Positions 1-26,679 of a stretch of DNA of 64,000 bases are shown in pieces. The translations under genes were made by a program, and so were the position numbers. The stretch lies in contig OZ316898.1 in the NCBI GenBank assembly GCA_973895155.1, positions 16,165,420 to 16,229,419 on the forward strand. Reading direction: 5' to 3'. Below the pieces are notes generated by a model. The model was not told where the DNA came from and did not search any database. It worked only from the letters and a program-made list of their open reading frames with translations. This DNA is from Marsupella aquatica. Taxonomy: Eukaryota; Plantae; Marchantiophyta. The first letter of the stretch is position 1. Each line of letters begins with the position of its first letter.

Positions 1-257
1 ATCGCGCATGCTAAAGTGCATACCAAACAATGTCGGTTGCAGCTCTAACTTTGCCAGTGATACATTCTCGCTGTTTCCAATGCTCTGGCAAAGTCTGAGC
101 TTAAACCGCAACCGATTGCCCTTCCAACTCGAAGTGAAATTTTGCCCCGAGCTCAGAATCGCAAAACTGGAGACGTAGCAGATCGCGCATGCTAAAGTGC
201 ATACCAAACGATGTCGGTTGCAGCTCTAACTTTGCCAGTGATACATTCTCATTGTTT
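1..257 (-). repeat. 181-bp tandem monomer array (>=1.4 units, runs off window), inverted relative to 401-902
   Basis: atcgcgcatgctaaagtgcataccaaac at 1 and 182 (period 181); reverse complement of the units at 401-902. Confidence 0.95.
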
Positions 258-400
258 TCGTTGCATTAAAGGCTTTACTTGTGTTGCTTTCGTTGTGATG
301 TCCTCTGTTCACGTCCTTTGATGAACAAGGTGAGCAGGAGGTCGACTTGCCTCGCCAACAGTACGGCTAGAGTTTCAGCAGTACGCCCTCCACATTCGCG

Positions 401-902
401 AGTTTCGCGATTCTAAGCTCGGGGCAAAATTTCACTTCGAGTTGGAAGGGCAATCGGCTGCGGTTTAAGCTCAGATTTTGCCAGAGCATTGGAAACAGCA
501 AGAATGTATCACTGGCAAAGTTAGAGCTGCAACCGACATCGTTTGGTATGCACTTTAGCATGCACGATCCATGACGTCTCCAGTTTCGCAATTCTGAGCT
601 TGGGGCGAAATTTCACTTCGAGTTGGAAGGGAAATCGGCTGCGGTTTAAGCTCAGACTTTGCCAGAGCATTGGAAACAGCGAGAATGTATCATTGGCAAA
701 GTTAGAGCTGCAACCGACATCGTTTGGTATGCACTTTAGCATGCACGATCTGCTACGTGTCCAGTTTCGGGATTCTGAGCTTGGGGCGAAATTTCACTTC
801 GAGTTGGAAGGGCAATCAGCTGCGGTTTGAGCTCAGACTTTGCCAGAGTGTTGCAAACAACGAGAGTGTATCACTGGCAAAGGTAGAGCTGCAACTGACA
901 TC
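401..902 (+). repeat. 181-bp tandem monomers (~2.8 units) directly upstream of LINE ORF1; candidate monomeric 5'UTR/promoter
   Basis: agtttcg..attct starts at 401, 582, 763; array ends ~65 bp before the ORF1 ATG; CpG-rich versus the CpG-poor LINE body. Confidence 0.9.
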
Positions 903-967
903 CTCTACTGCTCCCAATTTCTATTTGTCGTCTAAGAGTACATTCTAACAACAGTTTCAGCTTTGTG

Positions 968-1738
968 ATGGCAACGGAGGAGATTGCCCATCTCAAGGCT
1001 TTGCTTGAGAAAATCTTAGTTGTGGTTGAAAACTCCACAATTGAGATTACCACACTCAGCAAGGAGGTGACGGAGCTAAAGAATGAGAATGTCAAGCAAA
1101 AGAGGTTGATTAGTGATCTTCGATCTCAAACTCAGGAGAATGGTAAGCAACTCTCATTGCTTGCATCGTGTTTTGGAGACATGGAGAAGAGTATGTGCCC
1201 AGAGAAATCAGTGATACATGAGGCTGTAGGGGAGATTGAGGAAAAGCTCAAAACCTTTGCACAGGCTGCAAAACAATCACATATGGAATTTGTCCAATCC
1301 AAGGAGGAGGAGAGGAGAGCACTAGAGGAAGAACACAAGAACCAGCATGCAAGAGTCAGCAACTGCAAAATATCAGGCCTTGTTGAGGAGGAGAAGGAAG
1401 ACACCAAGAAGGTAGCAATTTCATTCTTCCAATCTCAGATGAAAGTGCATGACCCTATCATTTTGCAAGCATATAGGATTGGGCAAAAGAAAGGGGACCT
1501 TCCACGTCCAATCTTGGTGAAGTTTGCAGCTGAATCCGAGAAAGCTAGAGTGATGGCTAACAGGAGCATGCTTAAAGGGCTAAGGATTTGGTTGGATGAT
1601 GATCTGACTCCCACACAAGTCCAAGCAAGGAAAATTGAGCTTGAGAAGGTGAGGGTAGCCAAAGACCAAGGATTGGTAGCCTACTTGCGCAATGGACAAG
1701 CTGTTGTTACCAATAAGAAGAGAGTTGTTTCTAAATGA
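968..1738 (+). CDS. LINE ORF1p: coiled coil + RRM/CTD (Transposase_22/L1-type RNA-binding protein)
   Basis: Heptad-rich N-half; motifs NCKISGLVE, AYRIG, PRPILVKF, IWLDDDLT. Confidence 0.85.
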   Translation: MATEEIAHLKALLEKILVVVENSTIEITTLSKEVTELKNENVKQKRLISDLRSQTQENGKQLSLLASCFGDMEKSMCPEKSVIHEAVGEIEEKLKTFAQAAKQSHMEFVQSKEEERRALEEEHKNQHARVSNCKISGLVEEEKEDTKKVAISFFQSQMKVHDPIILQAYRIGQKKGDLPRPILVKFAAESEKARVMANRSMLKGLRIWLDDDLTPTQVQARKIELEKVRVAKDQGLVAYLRNGQAVVTNKKRVVSK

Positions 1739-1750
1739 TGGATCGGGACC

Positions 1751-2740
1751 TTGAGAGTCATGGCATGGAATGTTTCAGGACTTTCCATAGAAACAGCAAT
1801 TGGAGGGGAACCTTTGTTTGAGAATTTTGACATCTTGCTTTTCACGGAGACTTGGGAATATGAGGGAAATGCTCTACCTAGCATTAAAGGCTTTACTTGC
1901 ATACAATCCATCTTCAATGAGAAGAAGACCACACGGGGAAGAGGGTTTGGAGGCATTGCTGTCTACACCAAGAATCAACTTCAACACATCACCTCTATTG
2001 AGCATGAAGATCCCAGCAAACAGTTCATGGTGGTGAGACTTCATACTCTATCATTTCTGATTGTCACCTACTTTGCTCCCCTTAATATGAATGTCTATAA
2101 GATGGGAATTGCTGATGCACATTATCCATTTCATAGGTTAATCCAAGTCATTCATGATATATCACCACTAGGGGAGACATGGATAGTGGGGGACTTTAAT
2201 GCCAGGATATCTAATGAACAATTTACTGAAAGTGAGGACTTAGGAACTTTACCTTGGTCATCATGTAGTGAAGAGCTACCTTGGGTGAGAGAGGCTCTTG
2301 ACACCAGAACAAATGACATGACACGTCACTTTTTGCATTTGGGAGCTTCTTGTAATCTAAGAATATTGAATGGGCTTGAGAGATTTCCCCAATCATCTGG
2401 TTACACTTTTAGATCTAAACAAGGATGTAGTACCATTGATTACCTTCTTGCCACACCTACCTCTGCCACTAGAGTGGTTGACTTTCAAATACTTGATCAA
2501 CAACCAGAGTCTTCACACTTGCCTTTGTTGTTCCATCTTGACCTGACCACAATCCCAAACAAAGTGCATAGAAAGCCAGTACCCAAACCTCTGTTTCTAG
2601 ACCCTGATAGAGAAGTCATCTTCAAAGCCAACTTTGAACATCTTCTCCATACCCTGGATGATCAGATTGAGCTCTCAGAAGTCATAGTACAAGCAGCAGC
2701 CTCTACTTTCTCCACCAAACCCCCAGAAAGCAAAACATGA
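1751..2740 (+). CDS. LINE apurinic-like endonuclease (N-terminal part of ORF2)
   Basis: WNVSGL, LFTETW, GGIAVY, GDFNAR, STIDY, SSHLP (SDH variant); first in-frame ATG at 1760. Confidence 0.9.
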   Translation: MRVMAWNVSGLSIETAIGGEPLFENFDILLFTETWEYEGNALPSIKGFTCIQSIFNEKKTTRGRGFGGIAVYTKNQLQHITSIEHEDPSKQFMVVRLHTLSFLIVTYFAPLNMNVYKMGIADAHYPFHRLIQVIHDISPLGETWIVGDFNARISNEQFTESEDLGTLPWSSCSEELPWVREALDTRTNDMTRHFLHLGASCNLRILNGLERFPQSSGYTFRSKQGCSTIDYLLATPTSATRVVDFQILDQQPESSHLPLLFHLDLTTIPNKVHRKPVPKPLFLDPDREVIFKANFEHLLHTLDDQIELSEVIVQAAASTFSTKPPESKT

Positions 2741-4944
2741 AGGCTTGGTTTGACGAGGATTGTGCTAGAGCAAGGATGCAAGCAAGATCACATTCAGGGG
2801 AAAAGAGACTTTTGGCATTCACTATGTACAAGAACTTCATCAAACACAAGAAGAGGTGCTTCTTGAAGAGTCATCAACAATCACTATGTGAGGAGTTCAT
2901 CAAACATCCAAAACGTTTTTGGGAGAGAATGCAATCAGGCAAGACTACTCCCCCCTTGGATCACCAGGACCTGGTAACCTATGTCACATCCTTGTATTTC
3001 TTTCCAGATGCTAGTGGCATGCCTTTGCCCCTTGGGGACACCATTCAGTTTACAGAGAGGGAGGTGAAGGTGCATCTTTCCCACATGCAACATGGGAAAG
3101 CTAAAGATCTGTTGGGCCTGAACTTGGAGCTTCTTTTGTGGGGAGGACCCTCTTTATTAACAAACTTGGTGCATGAGCTGAATCAAGCAATGGCTTTAGG
3201 TTTACCTAAAGCTTGGATGACCAGAAGAGTGGTGCCTATCTTCAAGGCAGGCAACAAGGACGATGTGCACAACTACAGAACCATCATGGTAGGCAATACT
3301 TTTGCTAAAGTTTTGGGAGGACTACTTGAAGCCAGATTAAGCTCTTGGTTGGAGAGTGAGATGAAAAGGGCACCTTCACAAGCAGGTTTTAGGAGAGAAT
3401 TCAGCACTATGGATCACATTCTCTGCTTGAGGGTGTTGTGTGAAAAGGCCAAATCTCCACATAAACCATTATTTTGCTTGTTTGTGGACTTCTCCAAGGC
3501 CTTTGACAAAGTTTCCCGATCCAAACTTTGGGATAGGATGGTGGAGTTGGAAGTGCCTGAAGAGCTCAGGTTGGCTGTTTCTAAATTGTACCAAGAAGTG
3601 CGCATCAAACTTTCAAAGGAAACCTCTGAAGAAATCTGGAGCACTCTTGGGGTGATCCAAGGTTGTCCTCTCTCACCAACTCTATTTGGCATCTTCATTG
3701 ATCAGCTACACAACATTTTGGAGGAGCATGGTGGAGTTGGCACTCAATTGGGTAGGTTTGTCCTCCAACTTCTTATATTTGCAGATGATGTGGTCCTACT
3801 TGCTCATGCTCAAGAAGCTTTGCAAAGACATCTCAATGCCTTGGAGGAGTTTTGTCAAGCAACAGGGATGGTAGTCAACCTCAAGAAGACCAAGTGTTTG
3901 GGCATTGGCACACGACAAAATCCAGAGCTCTACTTCCAAGGGAATCTGGTGGAATTTGTGAGGACCTACAAATACCTTGGGGTGGAGTTCTCTCAAAACT
4001 TGAGTTGGGCCTCATGTGTAAAATCTAGGGCTGCCAATGGGTACAGAGCTTTTTATGCATTCATGAACAAATGCAAAAGAGCTGGTCTACACACTTGGAG
4101 GTTAAGGAAACATCTCTTTGGAGCTTTGGTGAAACCAGTCATTCTTTATGGAGCACCAATTTGGGGAGCAGGTGTGTCTAAATCTGGGTGGCAACAGATT
4201 GAGGGGCTGCAAAAGCTATTTCTTGAGATGGAGCTTGGGATCAAGTCACAAACCCCATATACACTTACACTTGCAGAGGCAGGCTTGTTTCCTTTGGAGG
4301 TGGAGGCACTCTTCCACACACTCAAATACATCATGCGTGTAAGAGAGTTGGAGGAAAACAGATTTCCTTTTCATGCCTTGCGCTCATCTTCAGCTAAAGG
4401 GTGGTATGCAGATGTGTGCAGGTGGGCCCATGCTTGGGATTTTCCTGAACATGAATGGCCAACACACCCAACCAAGCTAAGAGCAAAACTTGAGCAAAAG
4501 GCTTTGCACAAACTTTGGCATGAACCTAGCCCACGGCAGCAATACTACATGAGAGATGTGAACCCCATGAAGAAATATCGAGAACAAGAATACTTATCTA
4601 GCACTATCTCAGTACAACTTAGACAACTTATTGCTCAGTATAGACTAAGCTCACACCACCTTGAAGTAGAACAAGGGAGATGGAGGGATATTGACAGGAA
4701 AAAGAGGGTTTGTCAACTATGTGATAGCTCTAGTATAGAGAATGAATATCATGTATTCATTGCTTGCAAGTTTTATGAGGGGGTTAGGATGGCATCTCAA
4801 ATCTTGGTGAAAGATTTGTATGCATTGTTTGGTCTGCCCCCTCAGCAACTTGGAAGATATATCTTTGCGGTGGATAGGGAAAGGAGAATAGGTTTGGAAA
4901 ATCTTTCAGGGCTCTCTAGGTCCATAGTTTCTTTGAGGACATAG
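2737..4944 (+). CDS. LINE reverse transcriptase + C-terminal CCHC-type domain (735 aa)
   Basis: WFDEDC, NYRTI, QAGFR, DFSKAFD, GVIQGCPLSPTLF, FADD, YKYLG; ATG overlaps the EN stop (ATGA). Confidence 0.95.
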   Translation: MKAWFDEDCARARMQARSHSGEKRLLAFTMYKNFIKHKKRCFLKSHQQSLCEEFIKHPKRFWERMQSGKTTPPLDHQDLVTYVTSLYFFPDASGMPLPLGDTIQFTEREVKVHLSHMQHGKAKDLLGLNLELLLWGGPSLLTNLVHELNQAMALGLPKAWMTRRVVPIFKAGNKDDVHNYRTIMVGNTFAKVLGGLLEARLSSWLESEMKRAPSQAGFRREFSTMDHILCLRVLCEKAKSPHKPLFCLFVDFSKAFDKVSRSKLWDRMVELEVPEELRLAVSKLYQEVRIKLSKETSEEIWSTLGVIQGCPLSPTLFGIFIDQLHNILEEHGGVGTQLGRFVLQLLIFADDVVLLAHAQEALQRHLNALEEFCQATGMVVNLKKTKCLGIGTRQNPELYFQGNLVEFVRTYKYLGVEFSQNLSWASCVKSRAANGYRAFYAFMNKCKRAGLHTWRLRKHLFGALVKPVILYGAPIWGAGVSKSGWQQIEGLQKLFLEMELGIKSQTPYTLTLAEAGLFPLEVEALFHTLKYIMRVRELEENRFPFHALRSSSAKGWYADVCRWAHAWDFPEHEWPTHPTKLRAKLEQKALHKLWHEPSPRQQYYMRDVNPMKKYREQEYLSSTISVQLRQLIAQYRLSSHHLEVEQGRWRDIDRKKRVCQLCDSSSIENEYHVFIACKFYEGVRMASQILVKDLYALFGLPPQQLGRYIFAVDRERRIGLENLSGLSRSIVSLRT

Positions 4945-5051
4945 TTGTCCTCTTCTGAGCAATCTCTTTTGGTTGCTCTTTTCTTTGATTGCATTGTACT
5001 TTACTTTTTGTGGCAGCTCCTTTGACTTTCATGGTCCCGGAGCTTATAATA

Positions 5052-5072
5052 CATTACCATTACCATTACCAT
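5052..5072 (+). repeat. (CATTAC)3.5 LINE 3' microsatellite tail
   Basis: cattaccattaccattaccat, 107 bp after the RT stop. Confidence 0.85.
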
Positions 5073-8000
5073 AACAGCAACCACCTAAACTAATCAGTTC
5101 CCACTCATTGTCTTGGTTCCAACTACAGGTCATAGTATACACATAGCATGAAACGTGCATAGTACATATTTGATTCTGAGTTTATGAGTTTCCTAAGACA
5201 AAGAGCTTGGTGATAAACCCATATTCTCGATGGACATGTATATCAATCATATTAAAATCCTGTTTTTTCATCCAGAAAGACCGAAAGTCTCACCTTGCAG
5301 GTTGCAGCAGAGAGAAAATTCACTGGTTGTCGTGTTGTGCAAGTGAACCTCCACTGATGCCCCCGGTGTAGCCCCTCAGATGCAGGTGACACTTACCAAC
5401 TCCCAAGTTGCCTGGTCTAACAGAAAATGCTTATATCTTCAGAACTTTATAGAGCAAGTACATGATCACATACTTCTGGATCTATTCATATTTGGAACTC
5501 TTGCCAACTACAACTCCCATTATGCACAAGCTCACATCAACAGAGAAAAATACAGAATGCATACTTACTATGGCTCTAAGCACCTTCACTACCTTGTTGA
5601 ACCCAGTCCTGAAGTCTTTTCAGCGTGTTTGTTGTGCTGTCTCCTTTGGCACCCAACACCTTAGTCCTTGATGTAACAGAATGCGATTTTACAAGTTAGA
5701 TGCTTTGGAACCTTCTATGGTCTTAGCTGAATTGATGTCATCGTAAGTGGTGAAAGACAAGGAAGACGAAAGCTGGTTGAAGAGCTGTGGACAACACACT
5801 AGCATGAAGTGCTTCAACCAATCCACTGCCAAACGGAACTCTTACACAGTCACATTCTTTCAGTAAACAGAAACTCAATCAAACTTCATAATCAAAGTAC
5901 AGACTCTGAAGGACCAAAGGAGGATGTTGTGAGTTTCTCTGTTGTTTAATGTGTTACCCTTCTAGTTTCGAAGTTAGCAAATGCTGAATAATGTGTCTAC
6001 CAGATCTTCGAAAAGAAGCCCACCACAATTAAGAACTTTGGTATCTGGGTGAGGTATCAGAGTTGTACAGGTTATCCCAACATGTACAAGAAATATTGTG
6101 ATACCACATTAAACAACCACACAGCAGATGTATGATGAGATGGCTTCTTGTCATAGAGTTCGGTTCCCTTGCATCCAGATCATCAAGACTACGACAGTCC
6201 CTGTCTCTCTGTGCAAGCGAGAAAGTACCAAGTAGTTCCATGATTCAAAGATCAAGTTCCCCTTGACGTACCGCAAGATTCAACCTCCATCGCGAAAGCT
6301 AAAGACGACTTACAAGGCCACCAAGCCCAACACATTTGTTTGAGTAGTGCGGGTGTAGGTTCCCAATTTTGAAACAATTTGGCTCATTTTATGTCCCGAG
6401 GGACTCCAGGAGTTTATGTATTGAGTTTCTAGGTCAAGATGCTTAATATAAGGAAATTCAATTATCACCTCGTTCCCAACTTCTATTAATTGAATATACA
6501 CAAGCTGGAAGCAAGAAGACAAGCCACAATCTAGCATCTTAGCCAAACACAATCGTCCCGACAAAGCAAAACTCAGCTGGACAGAAGTCACTCGGATCCA
6601 CAAAAAATTGAAGATTCACCTCCAAGCCGGAGGCCGATCACTTCAGTACAGCAGCTTCTGGACGGAACAAACTCTGCTCAGCCCCACAAAAACACAAATG
6701 TTAAGGCTCCAAGTCAGAGCTCACAAACAGAAACTCAGATAAATAACATTCAAAATCTGTCCAGGTTTGTGCAAAGTGTACATATTCATTCTTCTGGAAT
6801 GAACACGCAATGCATACATCGCCTAGACACAGTCATTATAAATCATTGGGCAATTGGGGACCACTAAGCAGGTGTGTTCCTATTTCGAGGCTACAAGAAA
6901 GGATAGAGTGACACCAAACTGAAGAGTACACCAAAAGAAAAACAGCAAGAACCAAAGTCAATCATGTGTGGATATTTTGCACATGGGAAGTTCCCCTGAA
7001 GAAGCACCAGTTGCTAACATTGTCACCCGAACCACACCCAGTTTATTACCTCAATGTCTTCAGCCTCAATATCCAATCCTCAGCCCCCTGGTGCTTCCGT
7101 GTTTGTTCTGAAAATTTCTGTGATGAAATAATTATTCAATACATTCAATAGCAAAGAGAACTCAATCACAAAAGAAAAATAGTTAGTGTGAATGCTAATT
7201 TCTCAACACTTAACTAAATTCAAACCACCAATTCAAGTAGTAAGTTTCAAAAACTTGCCTTTACATGAAGAGAAACCAATTGGCCATGCATGTTACTAAA
7301 GCAATAAACAAATAATTAGGCTCAACCCCGGGCTCAACACACAGGCAAACTACTCGAAACATGCTGCTGAGAAGTAACATTTTTTGAATGTCAGACTATG
7401 TGTAAGTGCCATGATCGTGCTCCTACGTTTCACAAGGAGGGCTGGCCCGAAAGGGAGAAGCAACAATGTGGAGTCTATACACGTAGCACAAATCCCAGTT
7501 TAGAAGGGTGGATGAAGTTCAGACAAGAGTTCAGAACTTGCCATTTGAGATTGCCAATCTGAACTTCACATTCAGACAGGACTTCATCCAGTTCAGGAGT
7601 TCAGATAGGAGTTCAGACAATCTGAAGAGGACTTTGGACTTGAATGAGGGACAGCGTGGCCATATAGTTATCCTTGTGGCCTTCAGCTGCGTGTCTCAGG
7701 CTGAATTTCACTTTCCAGTTTCGAGAGTTCTGAAGGTCTAGTTTTAGTAACTTCCTCCTGACTCGACTTGGGAGCATTCTCCCTATTTGCTAGCTTGTAG
7801 TTAGCTTTGACTCCTGTGAGCTTAGTTGACGACCCTCTTGAGATATTAACAATTAGAACAAACACAAGTTGTCAAGACAGATTCCACCGGAGCAAAAAGT
7901 CCAAAATCAGGTGAAAGAAAACCTAAGGAAAGTCCATAAGAACGAAAGTAGGAAGGCAGGTGCACGGGCCACCGAGAAAAGTAAAGGATGCATGTGATTA

Positions 8001-9228: not shown

Positions 9229-11001
9229 CATGTAGCGATAGGCGAGAGCAGCGATTACGACGATGAAAGATGGTCAAAGCTGAAGCAAAACCCCTAAAGA
9301 TGCAGCTTGGCCATACTCTCTTTCCTCACCTCATAGCGCTAGGCATTCAACCTCCCTCTTCAATGAACCTCACAACAGCTTGAAGGTCGATAGATTTTAC
9401 CTCGTCTCCTGAGCAGAAACGTCTGCATTAGCTGAACAGAGCCCGGAACAGAGCTATCGCATTTAGCCTCCCGACTCCAAAATTGAACGCAACACAACCT
9501 CCAACTCCCAATGGCAGCTCAGTAGGTTGATCAGCTCGGTCAATGCAGGTCAGTCGACCTCAATAGCCACACTAGAAGCTCACCGCAAGTCACTCAAAGG
9601 TCAGACTAGAAGCTCCGCCGCCTTCACACCGTAGCAAAAAACAATGAGACCAATATCGAGCAAGGCGACCCTGTTTGAATATTTGGCGACCATCAGGCTC
9701 CACCCCTCCTTTCTCGCTACCGTTCCCCCATGTGATGGTTAAGCTTCTGAGGACACAATCAATCGCACAAATGTAGCTTAAAGCAGGACCTCACTAAGCA
9801 GACTATCGGTTAGGACCTTATAGACATAGAGATAGATAGGTCAATGCAACCTTACTTGGGCCGATGCAGCATGTCTCTTCACAATGTGAAGCAGCGCAGC
9901 ATTCCTCCACCTAGCTCGCAGTGATCCTCCGCCTTGCTTGCAGTAACCAGCCTCCGCCTAGCTAGTTTGCACTGTCACGGCTGCAACTTTTTGTGCAATG
10001 ACTTGGCCCTCCTACCAACTACGAGCTCCCAAAAGTATGTCGAGCAGATGTACACTCAGGCACCACCTCGTAGAGCTCAACTCCAAGTCGGCAGCTCTCA
10101 CTTGAAACTCAATAGCAGCTTAGCTCACCAGCAGGTTGAAAAGCGACAATGGACTCCCCTCAAAACTGATTGGCAGACCTCCACACTGACGCTCGTAGCA
10201 GGCCCAATCCTAAACACATTTGCACCCTAAAGTCCAGTCGCGCTCAAACACTTTCAAACGACCCTGCAGGAAGTTCGCGAAGAGTGCAGCTGGAATGAAG
10301 GTCGTCGACTCCCAATTTCCCTCGCAAAACCAACCTCTGCGGCACACTGACCCTGAACACTTAGGGCAAGTAGTACCCCCAAAATCTCTCGCAAAACCAA
10401 CCTCCAAGGTACACTGACCCTGAGGGAAAGTAGTACCCCTCACATGTGGGCAGCCATCGAGTGACTTAGCAAACAGGTTGGTTTGGACATAAAAGAACCA
10501 ATGCAAATGACTTAGCAAAAAGTTCAATGTGGGGAGAGTGCACTTTGGTCAAGAACAAGGCCAAATATAGTCAGGTATGAATCCACATTATAAGTGAAAG
10601 TACCCACCATTCTGATGAAAACCCCCATATTTATACCCATTATATTTGGACTTATTGAACCATGAGTGTGCAATATGTAGTTGCACCGGGAGTTGCATAT
10701 TAGGGATTGGCATCCGAAATTGGCTAATGGGGTATGCATGCTGACGGAATTTTAAAAAATGATGTCCAATTCATATTGCACTATTGTGGAGTAACTAACA
10801 TAACTTACCTATTTCTTACTTACTAGTGTTACAATAGCGACATTGGATAAAGTTGTAAGCATGACTTCCCACAACCTCACCAAAACTTAGTTGGTATGAT
10901 GTAACTAACATGACACCCACAAACTTGGAGTCGCATATTTATGAAGGTCTCGCACAAGTCACATAGGGGAGGGTCTCAGAATGGGTGGTTTTCTTCTAGT
11001 G

Positions 11002-25980: not shown

Positions 25981-26679
25981 TCCTGTTTACATTGGTGGAA
26001 AAAGCTCATAAACACATCCCCCCACTCTAAAGCCACCCATTGGGGTTGTGTTCCATTCAACGGCCTTTCTGGCCTACCCCCATTTCGGTGACCCACTCCA
26101 GGATTGTCAGAGCGAATGATGGGTGGCTGCGGTTTTGGGGTCACCCTTGAACAGATTGATGGCCAAATGGGAAGACAGCGAGTGCCTTCTGGTTCGCGGT
26201 TCCACCCTTCGTCTGACCGGTGAAGTCTGTTGCACAAAATCTTTTACCTGCAGTAGCCCGTTTTGTGACTAATGAAGTGTTTGGCTGTTAGTTGCTTTGA
26301 CAAAGCTTTGACAACATTTTATGTCCCTTTAATTGTCAATCTTCTCATCTCACGCCTTGAGTTCGTTTCTCATCCTACTCGTTCCCAGAAATCTCCAGGC
26401 CCAATTACACAGGTTCTCAAGAATGGCATCGTTGTTAGTGGATTTCTTGAGCATGGATTATGCTCTTTTTGGTTCGAGACTAGGTTGCAAGCCAGAAGTA
26501 ATTTCATTTGCAGCACTTGTGATTTGGTAATGGTAATGTATTATAAGCTCCGAGACCCTGAAAGTCAAAGGAGTTGCAACAACAAACGAAAGTGCAATGC
26601 AAAGAAATGAGCCATTAAAAGAAATCTATCCTCTATCAAACTAAGGACCTAAAGAGTACTCAAAGATGTTCCAAGCTTT

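What the first reader, a model, noticed from the sequence alone, without database searches (positions are those of the whole stretch)
401..967. Plant LINE with a mouse-L1-like 5' region of tandem 181-bp monomers
Seen: ~2.8 near-identical CpG-rich 181-bp units run directly into a 65-bp tether and the ORF1 ATG, while the LINE body is strongly CpG-poor. Known: rodent L1s use ~200-bp tandem monomers as additive internal promoters. I do not know of this design in plant or RTEX-type LINEs. Inference: a convergently evolved monomeric promoter of nucleosome-repeat length, and a possible source of satellite DNA.
Basis: partly seen in the sequence, partly recalled or inferred. Interest (0 to 1): 0.8.

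Follow-up and report, generated by a model that had tools for sequence, protein, structure and literature searches.

The report
Liverwort LINE with tandem 181-bp head
A jumping gene (LINE) in what looks like a liverwort genome starts with about three tandem copies of a 181-base unit in front of its first gene, much as mouse L1 elements do, and related liverwort LINEs have built similar repeated heads from unrelated sequence; promoter activity is still untested.

Summary
There are 2.8 head-to-tail 181-bp units at 396/401-902 (88-93% alike). A 65-bp non-repeated tether leads to the ORF1 ATG at 968. CpG is at expectation in the units (o/e 0.93) but almost gone from ORF1 and ORF2 (0.19 and 0.09).

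About 1.5 further units lie inverted at 1-264, cut by the window edge. The 131-bp spacer between the arrays is a patchwork that holds a 19-nt exact copy of this element's own ORF2.

The array is not a satellite that the LINE landed in: no unit occurs 3' of the element or elsewhere in the 64 kb.

The same genome is not in any searchable collection, so copy-number variation among sibling copies could not be tested. Earlier notes of this scan report 181-bp arrays at the head of this LINE at two other loci; these are unverified.

Related LINEs from other liverwort assemblies give indirect support. Six of eight 5' regions carry 2-3 diverged tandem units of 125-181 bp just upstream of ORF1. They fall into at least four unrelated sequence groups, and all show the same CpG contrast.

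Verdict: a real, element-borne monomeric 5' region, analogous to rodent L1 and convergent with it. Promoter function, the nucleosome-length idea and the satellite-seeding idea remain untested. I class it as a new variant of a known kind.

The parts
1..264 (-). Inverted array of the same 181-bp unit. Read on the minus strand it starts at about phase 91-98 of one unit and continues with at least 173 nt of the next. It is cut by the window's left edge.
   Evidence: the repeat finder I1-I3 give 92-95% complementarity to 396-749. blastn gives 93-96%.
265..395 (.). Spacer between the two arrays, best read as patchwork filler. Positions 263-281 are an exact 19-nt copy of this element's own ORF2 (1881-1899, same strand). 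The rest has no match.
   Evidence: blastn-short, E about 3e-5 for each 19-mer. The junction with the inverted unit shows imperfect microhomology to ORF2.
396..902 (+). Direct array of 2.8 units of 181 bp: m1 396-576, m2 577-757, m3 758-902 (truncated and most diverged).
   Evidence: TRF, the repeat finder D1, alignment A1, CpG o/e 0.93.
903..967 (+). Non-repeated 65-nt tether. Together with m3 it forms a 210-nt ATG-free leader before ORF1.
   Evidence: Sequence. uATG count: 7 in m1 and m2, none in 758-967.
968..1738 (+). ORF1, 256 aa: a long coiled coil followed by a C-terminal alpha/beta domain. It ends in TGA, in frame with ORF2.
   Evidence: the ORF listing. No Pfam hit. 23 homologues, 47-65% identical to the window's ORF1 in alignment A3 (76-82% over the shared C-terminal two-thirds in four partial hits), including Calypogeia fissa. 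AF2 model with pLDDT 79.
1739..2740 (+). ORF2, apurinic-type endonuclease part, in the same frame as ORF1.
   Evidence: Pfam Exo_endo_phos, E 1.9e-10. tblastn against the intact ORF2 of L002 gives 71% over residues 1-329.
2707..4944 (+). ORF2, reverse-transcriptase part, in another frame. A single frameshift between about 2707 and 2737 breaks this copy's ORF2.
   Evidence: Pfam RVT_1, E 4e-31. tblastn shows the frame change. Best solved relatives are R2 proteins (8e-27), ahead of human L1 ORF2p (7e-16).
4945..5074 (+). 3' UTR ending in three copies of a hexamer (ATTACC register), which mark the element's 3' terminus.
   Evidence: Sequence. The same terminus with two hexamers ends a 5'-truncated relative at 26525-26674 on the minus strand.

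Best explanation
The 181-bp array is the element's own 5' untranslated region and is carried along by retrotransposition. The element is a liverwort non-L1 LINE (apurinic endonuclease plus RT, coiled-coil ORF1, hexamer-repeat tail; RTE-X-like by reputation, not tested).

The head arose by tandem duplication of a 5' module, as happened independently in sister lineages. It most likely holds the internal RNA polymerase II promoter. Transcripts that start in an upstream unit carry the downstream units with them, so new copies inherit a variable number of units. The unit nearest ORF1 has decayed into an ATG-free leader.

The body is CpG-depleted in every relative, while the head keeps its CpGs. This fits a head that is either protected from germline methylation or replaced too often to decay.

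Shown: the anatomy, the CpG contrast, the absence of units 3' of the element, and recurrence in relatives. Inferred: transcription start sites in the units, additive promoter strength, and copy-number variation among siblings.

The inverted units at 1-264 plus the patchwork spacer are most simply a by-product of 5'-end resolution. In this reading the growing cDNA hopped across templates, including this element's own ORF2 RNA, and then copied an antisense monomer template. An independent head-to-head second copy is the alternative.
For: 1. Continuity: the array runs into a truncated last unit, a 65-nt tether and the ORF1 ATG with no break.
2. No unit occurs downstream of the 3' tail or anywhere else in 64 kb. 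The LINE is therefore not embedded in a satellite.
3. A second set of units with distinct variants lies inverted next to it. The spacer holds a 19/19 copy of this element's own ORF2 in the orientation expected for template switching of this element's cDNA.
4. Related LINEs carry tandem units right upstream of ORF1: L004 180 bp x2 (70%), L009 158 bp x about 3, L010 148 bp x2, L012-L017 157 bp x2, and L007 (Riccia) 125 bp x2 (85%). L001 and L011 (Calypogeia) have none.
5. Background rate: 3 of 175 control 700-bp segments had such a repeat, one of them the L007 head itself. Fisher's test of 6/8 against 2/174 gives p = 1.7e-8. That p-value counts 5' regions that are not all independent.
6. The units fall into at least four sequence-unrelated groups. 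The L004-type unit is single-copy in L001, so duplication arose within lineages.
7. The CpG contrast is clade-wide: bodies have o/e 0.01-0.13 and heads 0.24-0.96 in most Jungermanniopsida-like relatives. Exceptions are L011 (head 0.11) and the 159-nt L005 stub (0.16). Riccia has 0.56 against 1.17.
8. The 210 nt before ORF1 have no ATG, against about 3.8 expected, while m1 and m2 have seven.
9. Unverified scan notes s1-775408 and s1-777605 report 181-bp arrays of about 3.9 and 4.6 units at the head of this LINE at two other loci.
Against: - No sibling copy from the same genome could be read, so family-wide presence and variable copy number rest only on unverified notes.
- There are no transcript or TSS data and no recognisable core-promoter motif in the unit.
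- Seven upstream ATGs in m1 and m2 would hinder ORF1 translation from long transcripts.
- In relatives the units are few (2-3) and only 70-85% alike. In the L012 and L010 families they lie in the middle of a longer 5' region rather than at its tip, so tandem units need not be the promoter.
- Two Calypogeia families lack them.
- This copy's ORF2 has a frameshift, so it is not itself active.
Confidence: 0.7

Rival explanations
1. Independent satellite. The 181-bp repeat is a host satellite, and a 5'-truncated LINE happened to insert at or into it. The units are not part of the element.
For: The unit length is typical of plant satellites. Units occur in both orientations within 900 bp. In Marchantia a 162-165-bp centromeric satellite co-localises with LINE/RTE-X (bioRxiv 10.1101/827881).
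Against: There are only about 4.3 units in all, none 3' of the element and none elsewhere in 64 kb. The last unit grades into a tether that ends exactly at an intact ORF1 ATG, so ORF1 is not truncated. The same layout recurs with unrelated units in relatives. Unverified notes place the same array at the LINE head at two other loci.
Confidence: 0.07
2. Local accident. The array arose by tandem duplication or rearrangement at this one locus after insertion and is not a family trait.
For: The neighbourhood is visibly rearranged, with an inverted array and a patchwork spacer. No sibling copy could be checked.
Against: The units differ by 7-12%, while the 3.9-kb coding body has no stop codon and only one frameshift. 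This suggests that the unit variants were inherited from the source rather than built up in place. The inverted units carry a different combination of variants, not a copy of the adjacent direct units. Relatives show the same design.
Confidence: 0.1
3. The array is element-borne but is not a promoter. The units would be transcribed leader sequence with another role: structured RNA, a translational brake through uORFs, a small-RNA source or decoy, or a chromatin-recruiting site. The promoter would lie elsewhere.
For: Each unit folds into three hairpins with a 24-bp imperfect central stem (z = -3.0 for one unit, -4.2 for the whole head). There are seven uATGs. In the L010 and L012 families the units lie 100-400 nt inside a longer 5' region.
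Against: The retained CpG, which is generally a mark of unmethylated promoters. The analogy with rodent L1 and the 200-bp promoter A-module of Dictyostelium TRE5-A (PMC5381506, PMC3159450). There is no Rfam match. Fold z-scores of -3 to -4 are expected for any sequence that contains an inverted repeat.
Confidence: 0.13

Closest known systems
Mouse L1 (A, Gf and Tf monomers of about 200 bp) and rat L1 (about 650 bp) monomeric 5' UTRs
   Same: Tandem monomers are followed by a tether and ORF1. The head carries the CpGs. 5' UTRs are unrelated between lineages (PMC5381506). Here the plan is the same: 2.8 units, a truncated last unit, a 65-nt tether, and a CpG-normal head on a CpG-poor body.
   Different: The host kingdom and the LINE clade differ: the RT is closer to R2 than to L1 in the PDB, and ORF1 has no Transposase_22 hit. 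The tether is shorter (65 against about 250 nt). GC content is only 48%. The tail is a hexamer repeat rather than poly(A). Promoter activity is untested.
Tandemly duplicated 70-100-bp motifs in other mammalian L1 5' UTRs (hyrax, horse, elephant, opossum)
   Same: Low-copy (2-3) tandem duplications arise repeatedly and independently in LINE heads (PMC5381506). The 2-3 diverged units in L004, L009, L010, L012 and L007 look the same.
   Different: The units here are longer (125-181 bp) and sit in liverwort non-L1 LINEs.
5' UTR switching in plant RTE LINEs (SolRTE of Nicotiana)
   Same: Conserved bodies and 3' ends are combined with exchangeable, non-homologous 5' UTRs (bioRxiv 10.1101/2022.11.04.512097). 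The liverwort relatives likewise share ORFs but have at least four unrelated heads and two ORF1 N-terminal types.
   Different: That paper reports no tandem monomers; the words 'tandem' and 'monomer' do not occur in it. SolRTE has a single ORF and a (TTG)n tail.
Dictyostelium TRE5-A A-module
   Same: A 200-bp modular promoter unit at the 5' end of a non-LTR retrotransposon, outside animals and plants (PMC3159450). From my own memory, not checked here: some copies carry more than one A-module.
   Different: It is an unrelated clade that targets tRNA genes, with no CpG contrast described.

Membership tests
Monomeric LINE 5' UTR of the rodent-L1 type (architecture class) | Two or more head-to-tail monomers at the 5' end of a full-length element | tested here: met
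   2.8 units of 181 bp at 396-902
Monomeric LINE 5' UTR of the rodent-L1 type (architecture class) | A non-monomeric tether joins the last, truncated monomer to ORF1 | tested here: met
   Unit 3 ends at about phase 145; the 65-nt tether at 903-967 runs to the ATG at 968
Monomeric LINE 5' UTR of the rodent-L1 type (architecture class) | CpG concentrated in the monomers relative to the body | tested here: met
   o/e 0.93 against 0.09-0.19; the same contrast is seen in most relatives
Monomeric LINE 5' UTR of the rodent-L1 type (architecture class) | Monomer number varies among copies of the family | not testable with these tools
   The genome is absent from the searchable collections. Only unverified notes s1-775408 and s1-777605 suggest about 3.9 and 4.6 units elsewhere.
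Monomeric LINE 5' UTR of the rodent-L1 type (architecture class) | Each monomer has promoter activity or start sites | not testable with these tools
   No expression data. Indirect only: the ATG-free proximal 210 nt.
L1 clade | RT and ORF1 group with L1 (Transposase_22 ORF1, L1-type ORF2p) | tested here: not met
   ORF1 has no Pfam hit. The RT matches R2 proteins (8e-27) better than human ORF2p (7e-16). The ORF1 fold match to L1 ORF1p is weak: Foldseek E about 1e-2, VIA Z 4.5-4.8.
RTE / RTE-X clade LINE | Apurinic-type endonuclease plus RT in ORF2 | tested here: met
   Exo_endo_phos and RVT_1
RTE / RTE-X clade LINE | 3' end made of short tandem repeats instead of poly(A) | tested here: met
   Hexamer x3 at about 5055-5074. 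Relatives have (TTGAC)n and (AACCTT)n.
RTE / RTE-X clade LINE | RT domain groups with RTE-X reference sequences in a phylogeny | not tested
   No reference (Repbase) sequences were available. The only link is that Marchantia papers call the liverwort-expanded LINE family RTE-X.
Stand-alone satellite DNA | Long arrays independent of a transposon, present on both sides of any inserted element | tested here: not met
   About 4.3 units in total, all 5' of ORF1; none after the 3' tail or elsewhere in 64 kb

The most novel reading that the evidence does not exclude
Liverwort LINE heads are a standing source of satellite DNA of about 150-180 bp. On this reading the monomer arrays carried by this LINE clade can expand into stand-alone arrays, and the 162-165-bp centromeric repeat of Marchantia, which is tightly flanked by LINE/RTE-X, descends from such a head. 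The clade clusters in a few chromosome regions in Riccia, and in Calypogeia and two metagenome contigs its copies lie directly behind one another's tails. This would give a concrete retrotransposon-to-centromere-satellite pathway in an early-diverging land plant lineage.
Probability: 0.1. Interest if true: 0.8.

Novelty: new variant of a known kind. Interest (0 to 1): 0.52.

Why it matters
If the units are promoters, this is a convergent reinvention of the rodent L1 design in a different LINE clade and a different kingdom. Tandem promoter modules would then be a general solution for retrotransposons that must carry their own promoter inside the transcript while the host methylates them.

The clade-wide contrast between a CpG-free body and a CpG-retaining head also gives a clean natural system for asking how liverwort methylation treats LINE promoters.

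The patchwork junction and inverted head offer a case study of how 5' ends of plant LINE insertions are resolved.

The possible link to centromere-associated RTE-X elements and 160-bp-class satellites in Marchantia is worth one genome-wide BLAST.

Tried and rejected
Searches that led nowhere:
- Exact look-up of the window's ORF1 in public assemblies: not on record.
- Word searches with ORF1 and the RT part: the best full-length hits are 61-66% identical, so the source genome is not in the collection.
- Scan of metagenome contigs for an invariant 20-mer of the unit: 0 hits.
- The search for related loci with the ORF1 alignment: one short locus only.
- Three Logan contigs with the closest ORF1s or a second copy had no retrievable DNA.
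- TRF on the relatives found no units because they are only 70-78% alike. A lenient self-BLAST was needed.
- Rfam on 1-5300 at E <= 1: nothing.
- Pfam on ORF1: nothing.
- ORF1 structure search: L1 ORF1p ranks first in Foldseek but weakly, and VIA Z is 4.5-5.5, tied with ribosomal and KH-like folds. Inconclusive.
- A search for the identity of the SRR18067xxx runs found nothing useful.

Ideas considered and rejected:
- Simple snap-back hairpin. The arms are out of mirror register by about 91 nt and only 94-96% alike.
- Homology between the window's unit and any relative's 5' region: local-alignment z-scores are at most 2.6.
- A conserved nucleosome-length period: the periods are 125, 148, 157-158, 180 and 181 bp.

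Full report
**1. What is there**

The left 5.1 kb of the window holds one almost intact non-LTR retrotransposon on the plus strand.
- Tandem Repeats Finder reports a single strong array at 401-902: period 181, 2.8 copies, 91% matches, no indels.
- The repeat finder puts the units in register at 396-576, 577-757 and 758-938.
- In register the units are 93% (m1/m2), 88% (m1/m3) and 90% (m2/m3) alike. Unit 3 loses homology at 902.
- A 65-nt non-repeated stretch (903-967) leads to the ATG of a 256-aa ORF1 at 968-1738.
- ORF1 ends in a TGA that is in frame with ORF2.
- ORF2 has an apurinic-type endonuclease domain (Exo_endo_phos, 1.9e-10) and a reverse transcriptase domain (RVT_1, 4e-31).
- A single frame change between about 2707 and 2737 splits ORF2 in this copy. 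There are no other breaks.
- The element ends at about 5074 in three copies of a hexamer. A severely 5'-truncated relative at 26525-26674 (minus strand) ends in the same terminus with two hexamers, which fixes the 3' boundary.

**2. The CpG claim**

| Region | CpG observed/expected |
|---|---|
| Direct units | 0.93 |
| Inverted units | 1.04 |
| ORF1 | 0.19 |
| ORF2 | 0.09 |
| Rest of the window | 0.54 |

The head is best called CpG-normal at 48% GC, not a GC-rich island, but the step at the ORF1 ATG is about tenfold. Of the 38 differences from the unit consensus, 12 are CpG transitions, although CpG sites make up only 13% of positions. The units have therefore seen some methylation-type decay.

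**3.

Positions 1-264 hold about 1.5 further units in inverted orientation, 92-96% complementary to the direct array, and they run off the left edge of the window.

The 131 bp between the arrays is not unit-like. It contains an exact 19-nt copy of this element's own ORF2 (263-281 = 1881-1899, same strand). Each match has E about 3e-5. Where the inverted unit meets the ORF2 snippet, the two sources share an imperfect microhomology of about 12 nt.

The ORF2 snippet has the orientation expected if the cDNA of the plus-strand LINE, having reached the RNA's 5' end, went on by switching to a LINE sense RNA. The following inverted units would then need an antisense template, either the nascent cDNA or an antisense transcript.

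The arms are not mirror images. Their register is off by about 91 nt and they are 94-96% identical. The inverted pair combines an m2-type unit end with an m1-type unit start, a junction that is absent from the direct array.

I therefore cannot decide between two readings:
- one complex insertion (template hopping or a twin-priming-like event on an RNA with more units), about 50%;
- a second, independent head-to-head copy, about 40%.

Either way the units moved together with LINE sequence.

**4. Satellite or part of the element**

A conserved 46-nt core of the unit occurs only at the four sites upstream of ORF1, against 0 in 100 shuffles. No unit lies after the 3' tail or anywhere else in 64 kb. 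A LINE that had inserted into a satellite would have units on both sides. ORF1 is full-length at its N-terminus compared with homologues that share its N-terminal type (P0001-P0003), so the element is not 5'-truncated into foreign DNA.

**5. Sibling copies**

- The window's ORF1 is not on record.
- The best public ORF1 and RT relatives are 61-66% identical.
- A scan of metagenome contigs for an invariant 20-mer of the unit found nothing.
- Earlier first-stage notes of this scan report 181-bp arrays at the head of this LINE 120 kb and 3.0 Mb away, 839 and 713 letters long (about 4.6 and 3.9 units). These are unverified leads. If true, they are the variable copy number that the hypothesis predicts.

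**6. Relatives**

ORF1 and RT homologues come from Calypogeia fissa, Riccia sorocarpa and unnamed assemblies. The host is therefore very probably a liverwort.

I fetched 17 loci and looked upstream of each ORF1 with a lenient self-BLAST, because TRF misses units below about 75% identity.

| Locus | Tandem units upstream of ORF1 |
|---|---|
| L004 | 180 bp x2, 70% over 172 nt |
| L009 | 158 bp x about 3 |
| L010 | 148 bp x2, ending 65 nt before the ATG |
| L012-L017 | 157 bp x2 |
| L007 (Riccia) | 125 bp x2, 85% |
| L001, L011 (Calypogeia) | none |

The same test on 175 control segments of 700 bp found three hits, one of which was the L007 head itself. Fisher's test of 6/8 against 2/174 gives p = 1.7e-8. 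That p-value overstates independence: L009, L010 and L012 share a homologous unit, and the L004-type unit is present once in L001. Counting origins, there are at least four unrelated unit families (window; L004; L009/L010/L012; L007) among about six kinds of head. The window's unit shows no similarity to any other (z at most 2.6).

The single-copy state in L001 against two copies in L004 shows that such arrays arise by duplication of an existing 5' segment.

The window's array is the extreme of the series: the most copies and by far the most homogeneous.

**7. The CpG contrast is a property of the clade**

Bodies have o/e 0.01-0.13 and heads 0.24-0.96 in most of the Jungermanniopsida-like relatives. 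Exceptions are L011 (head 0.11) and the 159-nt L005 stub (0.16). Riccia has 0.56 against 1.17. Because independent families in different species share it, the depletion reflects long-term evolution of active lineages rather than decay of dead copies.

**8. Hints on function**

All of these are inferred, none shown.
- The 210 nt before ORF1 (unit 3 plus tether) have no ATG, against about 3.8 expected. m1 and m2 have seven ATGs with short uORFs. This fits a main start site in or near the last full unit.
- Each unit contains a 24-bp imperfect inverted repeat and folds into three hairpins (z = -3.0 for one unit, -4.2 for the whole head).
- There is no Rfam match.

**9. Classification**

The RT is closer to solved R2 proteins (8e-27) than to human L1 ORF2p (7e-16), so the element is not an L1. 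The endonuclease type and the short-repeat tail fit RTE-like elements. Marchantia papers call the liverwort-expanded, centromere-flanking LINE family RTE-X. I had no reference RT set, so the RTE-X label is untested.

ORF1 is a long coiled coil plus an alpha/beta C-terminal part (AF2 pLDDT 79). Human L1 ORF1p fills the first seven Foldseek ranks but only at E about 1e-2, and VIA Z is 4.5-4.8. This is inconclusive.

**10. Comparison with what is known**

Monomeric 5' UTRs are textbook for mouse and rat L1. Tandem duplications of 70-100 bp recur in hyrax, horse, elephant and opossum L1 heads (PMC5381506). Dictyostelium TRE5-A has a 200-bp promoter module (PMC3159450). Plant RTE LINEs are known to swap 5' UTRs (bioRxiv 10.1101/2022.11.04.512097), but that paper does not mention tandem units. 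My full-text searches found no report of monomer arrays at plant LINE heads. A blank full-text search of open papers is weak evidence of absence.

**11. Verdict**

The 'mouse-L1-like' architecture is real and convergent, and it is part of a recurrent habit of this liverwort LINE clade. Promoter function, additivity, the nucleosome-length argument (periods range from 125 to 181 bp) and the satellite-seeding idea are untested. I rate it a new variant of a known kind, of moderate interest. Interest would rise if the link to the 160-bp-class centromeric satellites of liverworts held.

Noticed in passing
L001 5915, 5931; L002 171, 366; L004 352, 549; L005 98, 115, 132; L008 192; L009 4154; L010 5105, 5253; L012 468, 624: A telo-box-like motif (TTAGGG followed by A/T then T, sense strand) sits in the 5' region of every related LINE whose 5' UTR was available. 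It occurs once per tandem unit in L010 and L012 and almost nowhere else in those loci. The window's 181-bp units have none. From my own memory, unchecked: telo-boxes are plant promoter and Polycomb-recruiting elements.
   Followed up: partly
L010 4334-4886 and 13265-13522: Two full-length LINE copies begin with an inverted 553-bp or 258-bp piece of their own RT region. Each abuts the 3' tail of the preceding LINE. Inverted 5' segments and insertion next to sibling tails therefore recur in this clade. L001 (Calypogeia) also shows copies lying directly after (TTGAC)n tails.
   Followed up: partly
window 26525-26674 (minus strand): A 150-bp 5'-truncated LINE remnant is 74% like the main copy's 3' UTR but has an identical terminus and two instead of three tail hexamers.
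   Followed up: yes
window 1736-1760: ORF1 and ORF2 are in the same frame, separated by one TGA. Translation of ORF2 could use readthrough or reinitiation at the ATGs near 1770. Scan note s1-777609 reports the same at another copy.
   Followed up: partly
alignment A3 (ORF1 homologues): ORF1 has two unrelated N-terminal coiled-coil types on a shared C-terminal domain: an 'MAT..' type as in the window and an 'MGDQ..' type. The 5' module swap therefore reaches into the coding region.
   Followed up: no
Riccia sorocarpa hits: RT homologues in Riccia have locus tags that bunch in a few runs per chromosome-scale contig (for example R1sor_026996-027230, 001268-001300, 010455-010483). This suggests regional clustering like the centromere-flanking RTE-X of Marchantia.
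   Followed up: no
same genome, 1.29 Mb before the window (scan note s1-776061): An unverified first-stage note reports a CRE-clade retrotransposon with a 197-bp monomer array at its 5' end. This would be a second, unrelated element with the same design in this genome.
   Followed up: no
contigs of P0001 and P0003 (no DNA held); L005: Three independent short-read contigs of the closest ORF1 relatives start 95, 98 and 159 nt upstream of the ATG. This may mark an assembly break at a repeated head or a transcript start. It could not be checked.
   Followed up: no
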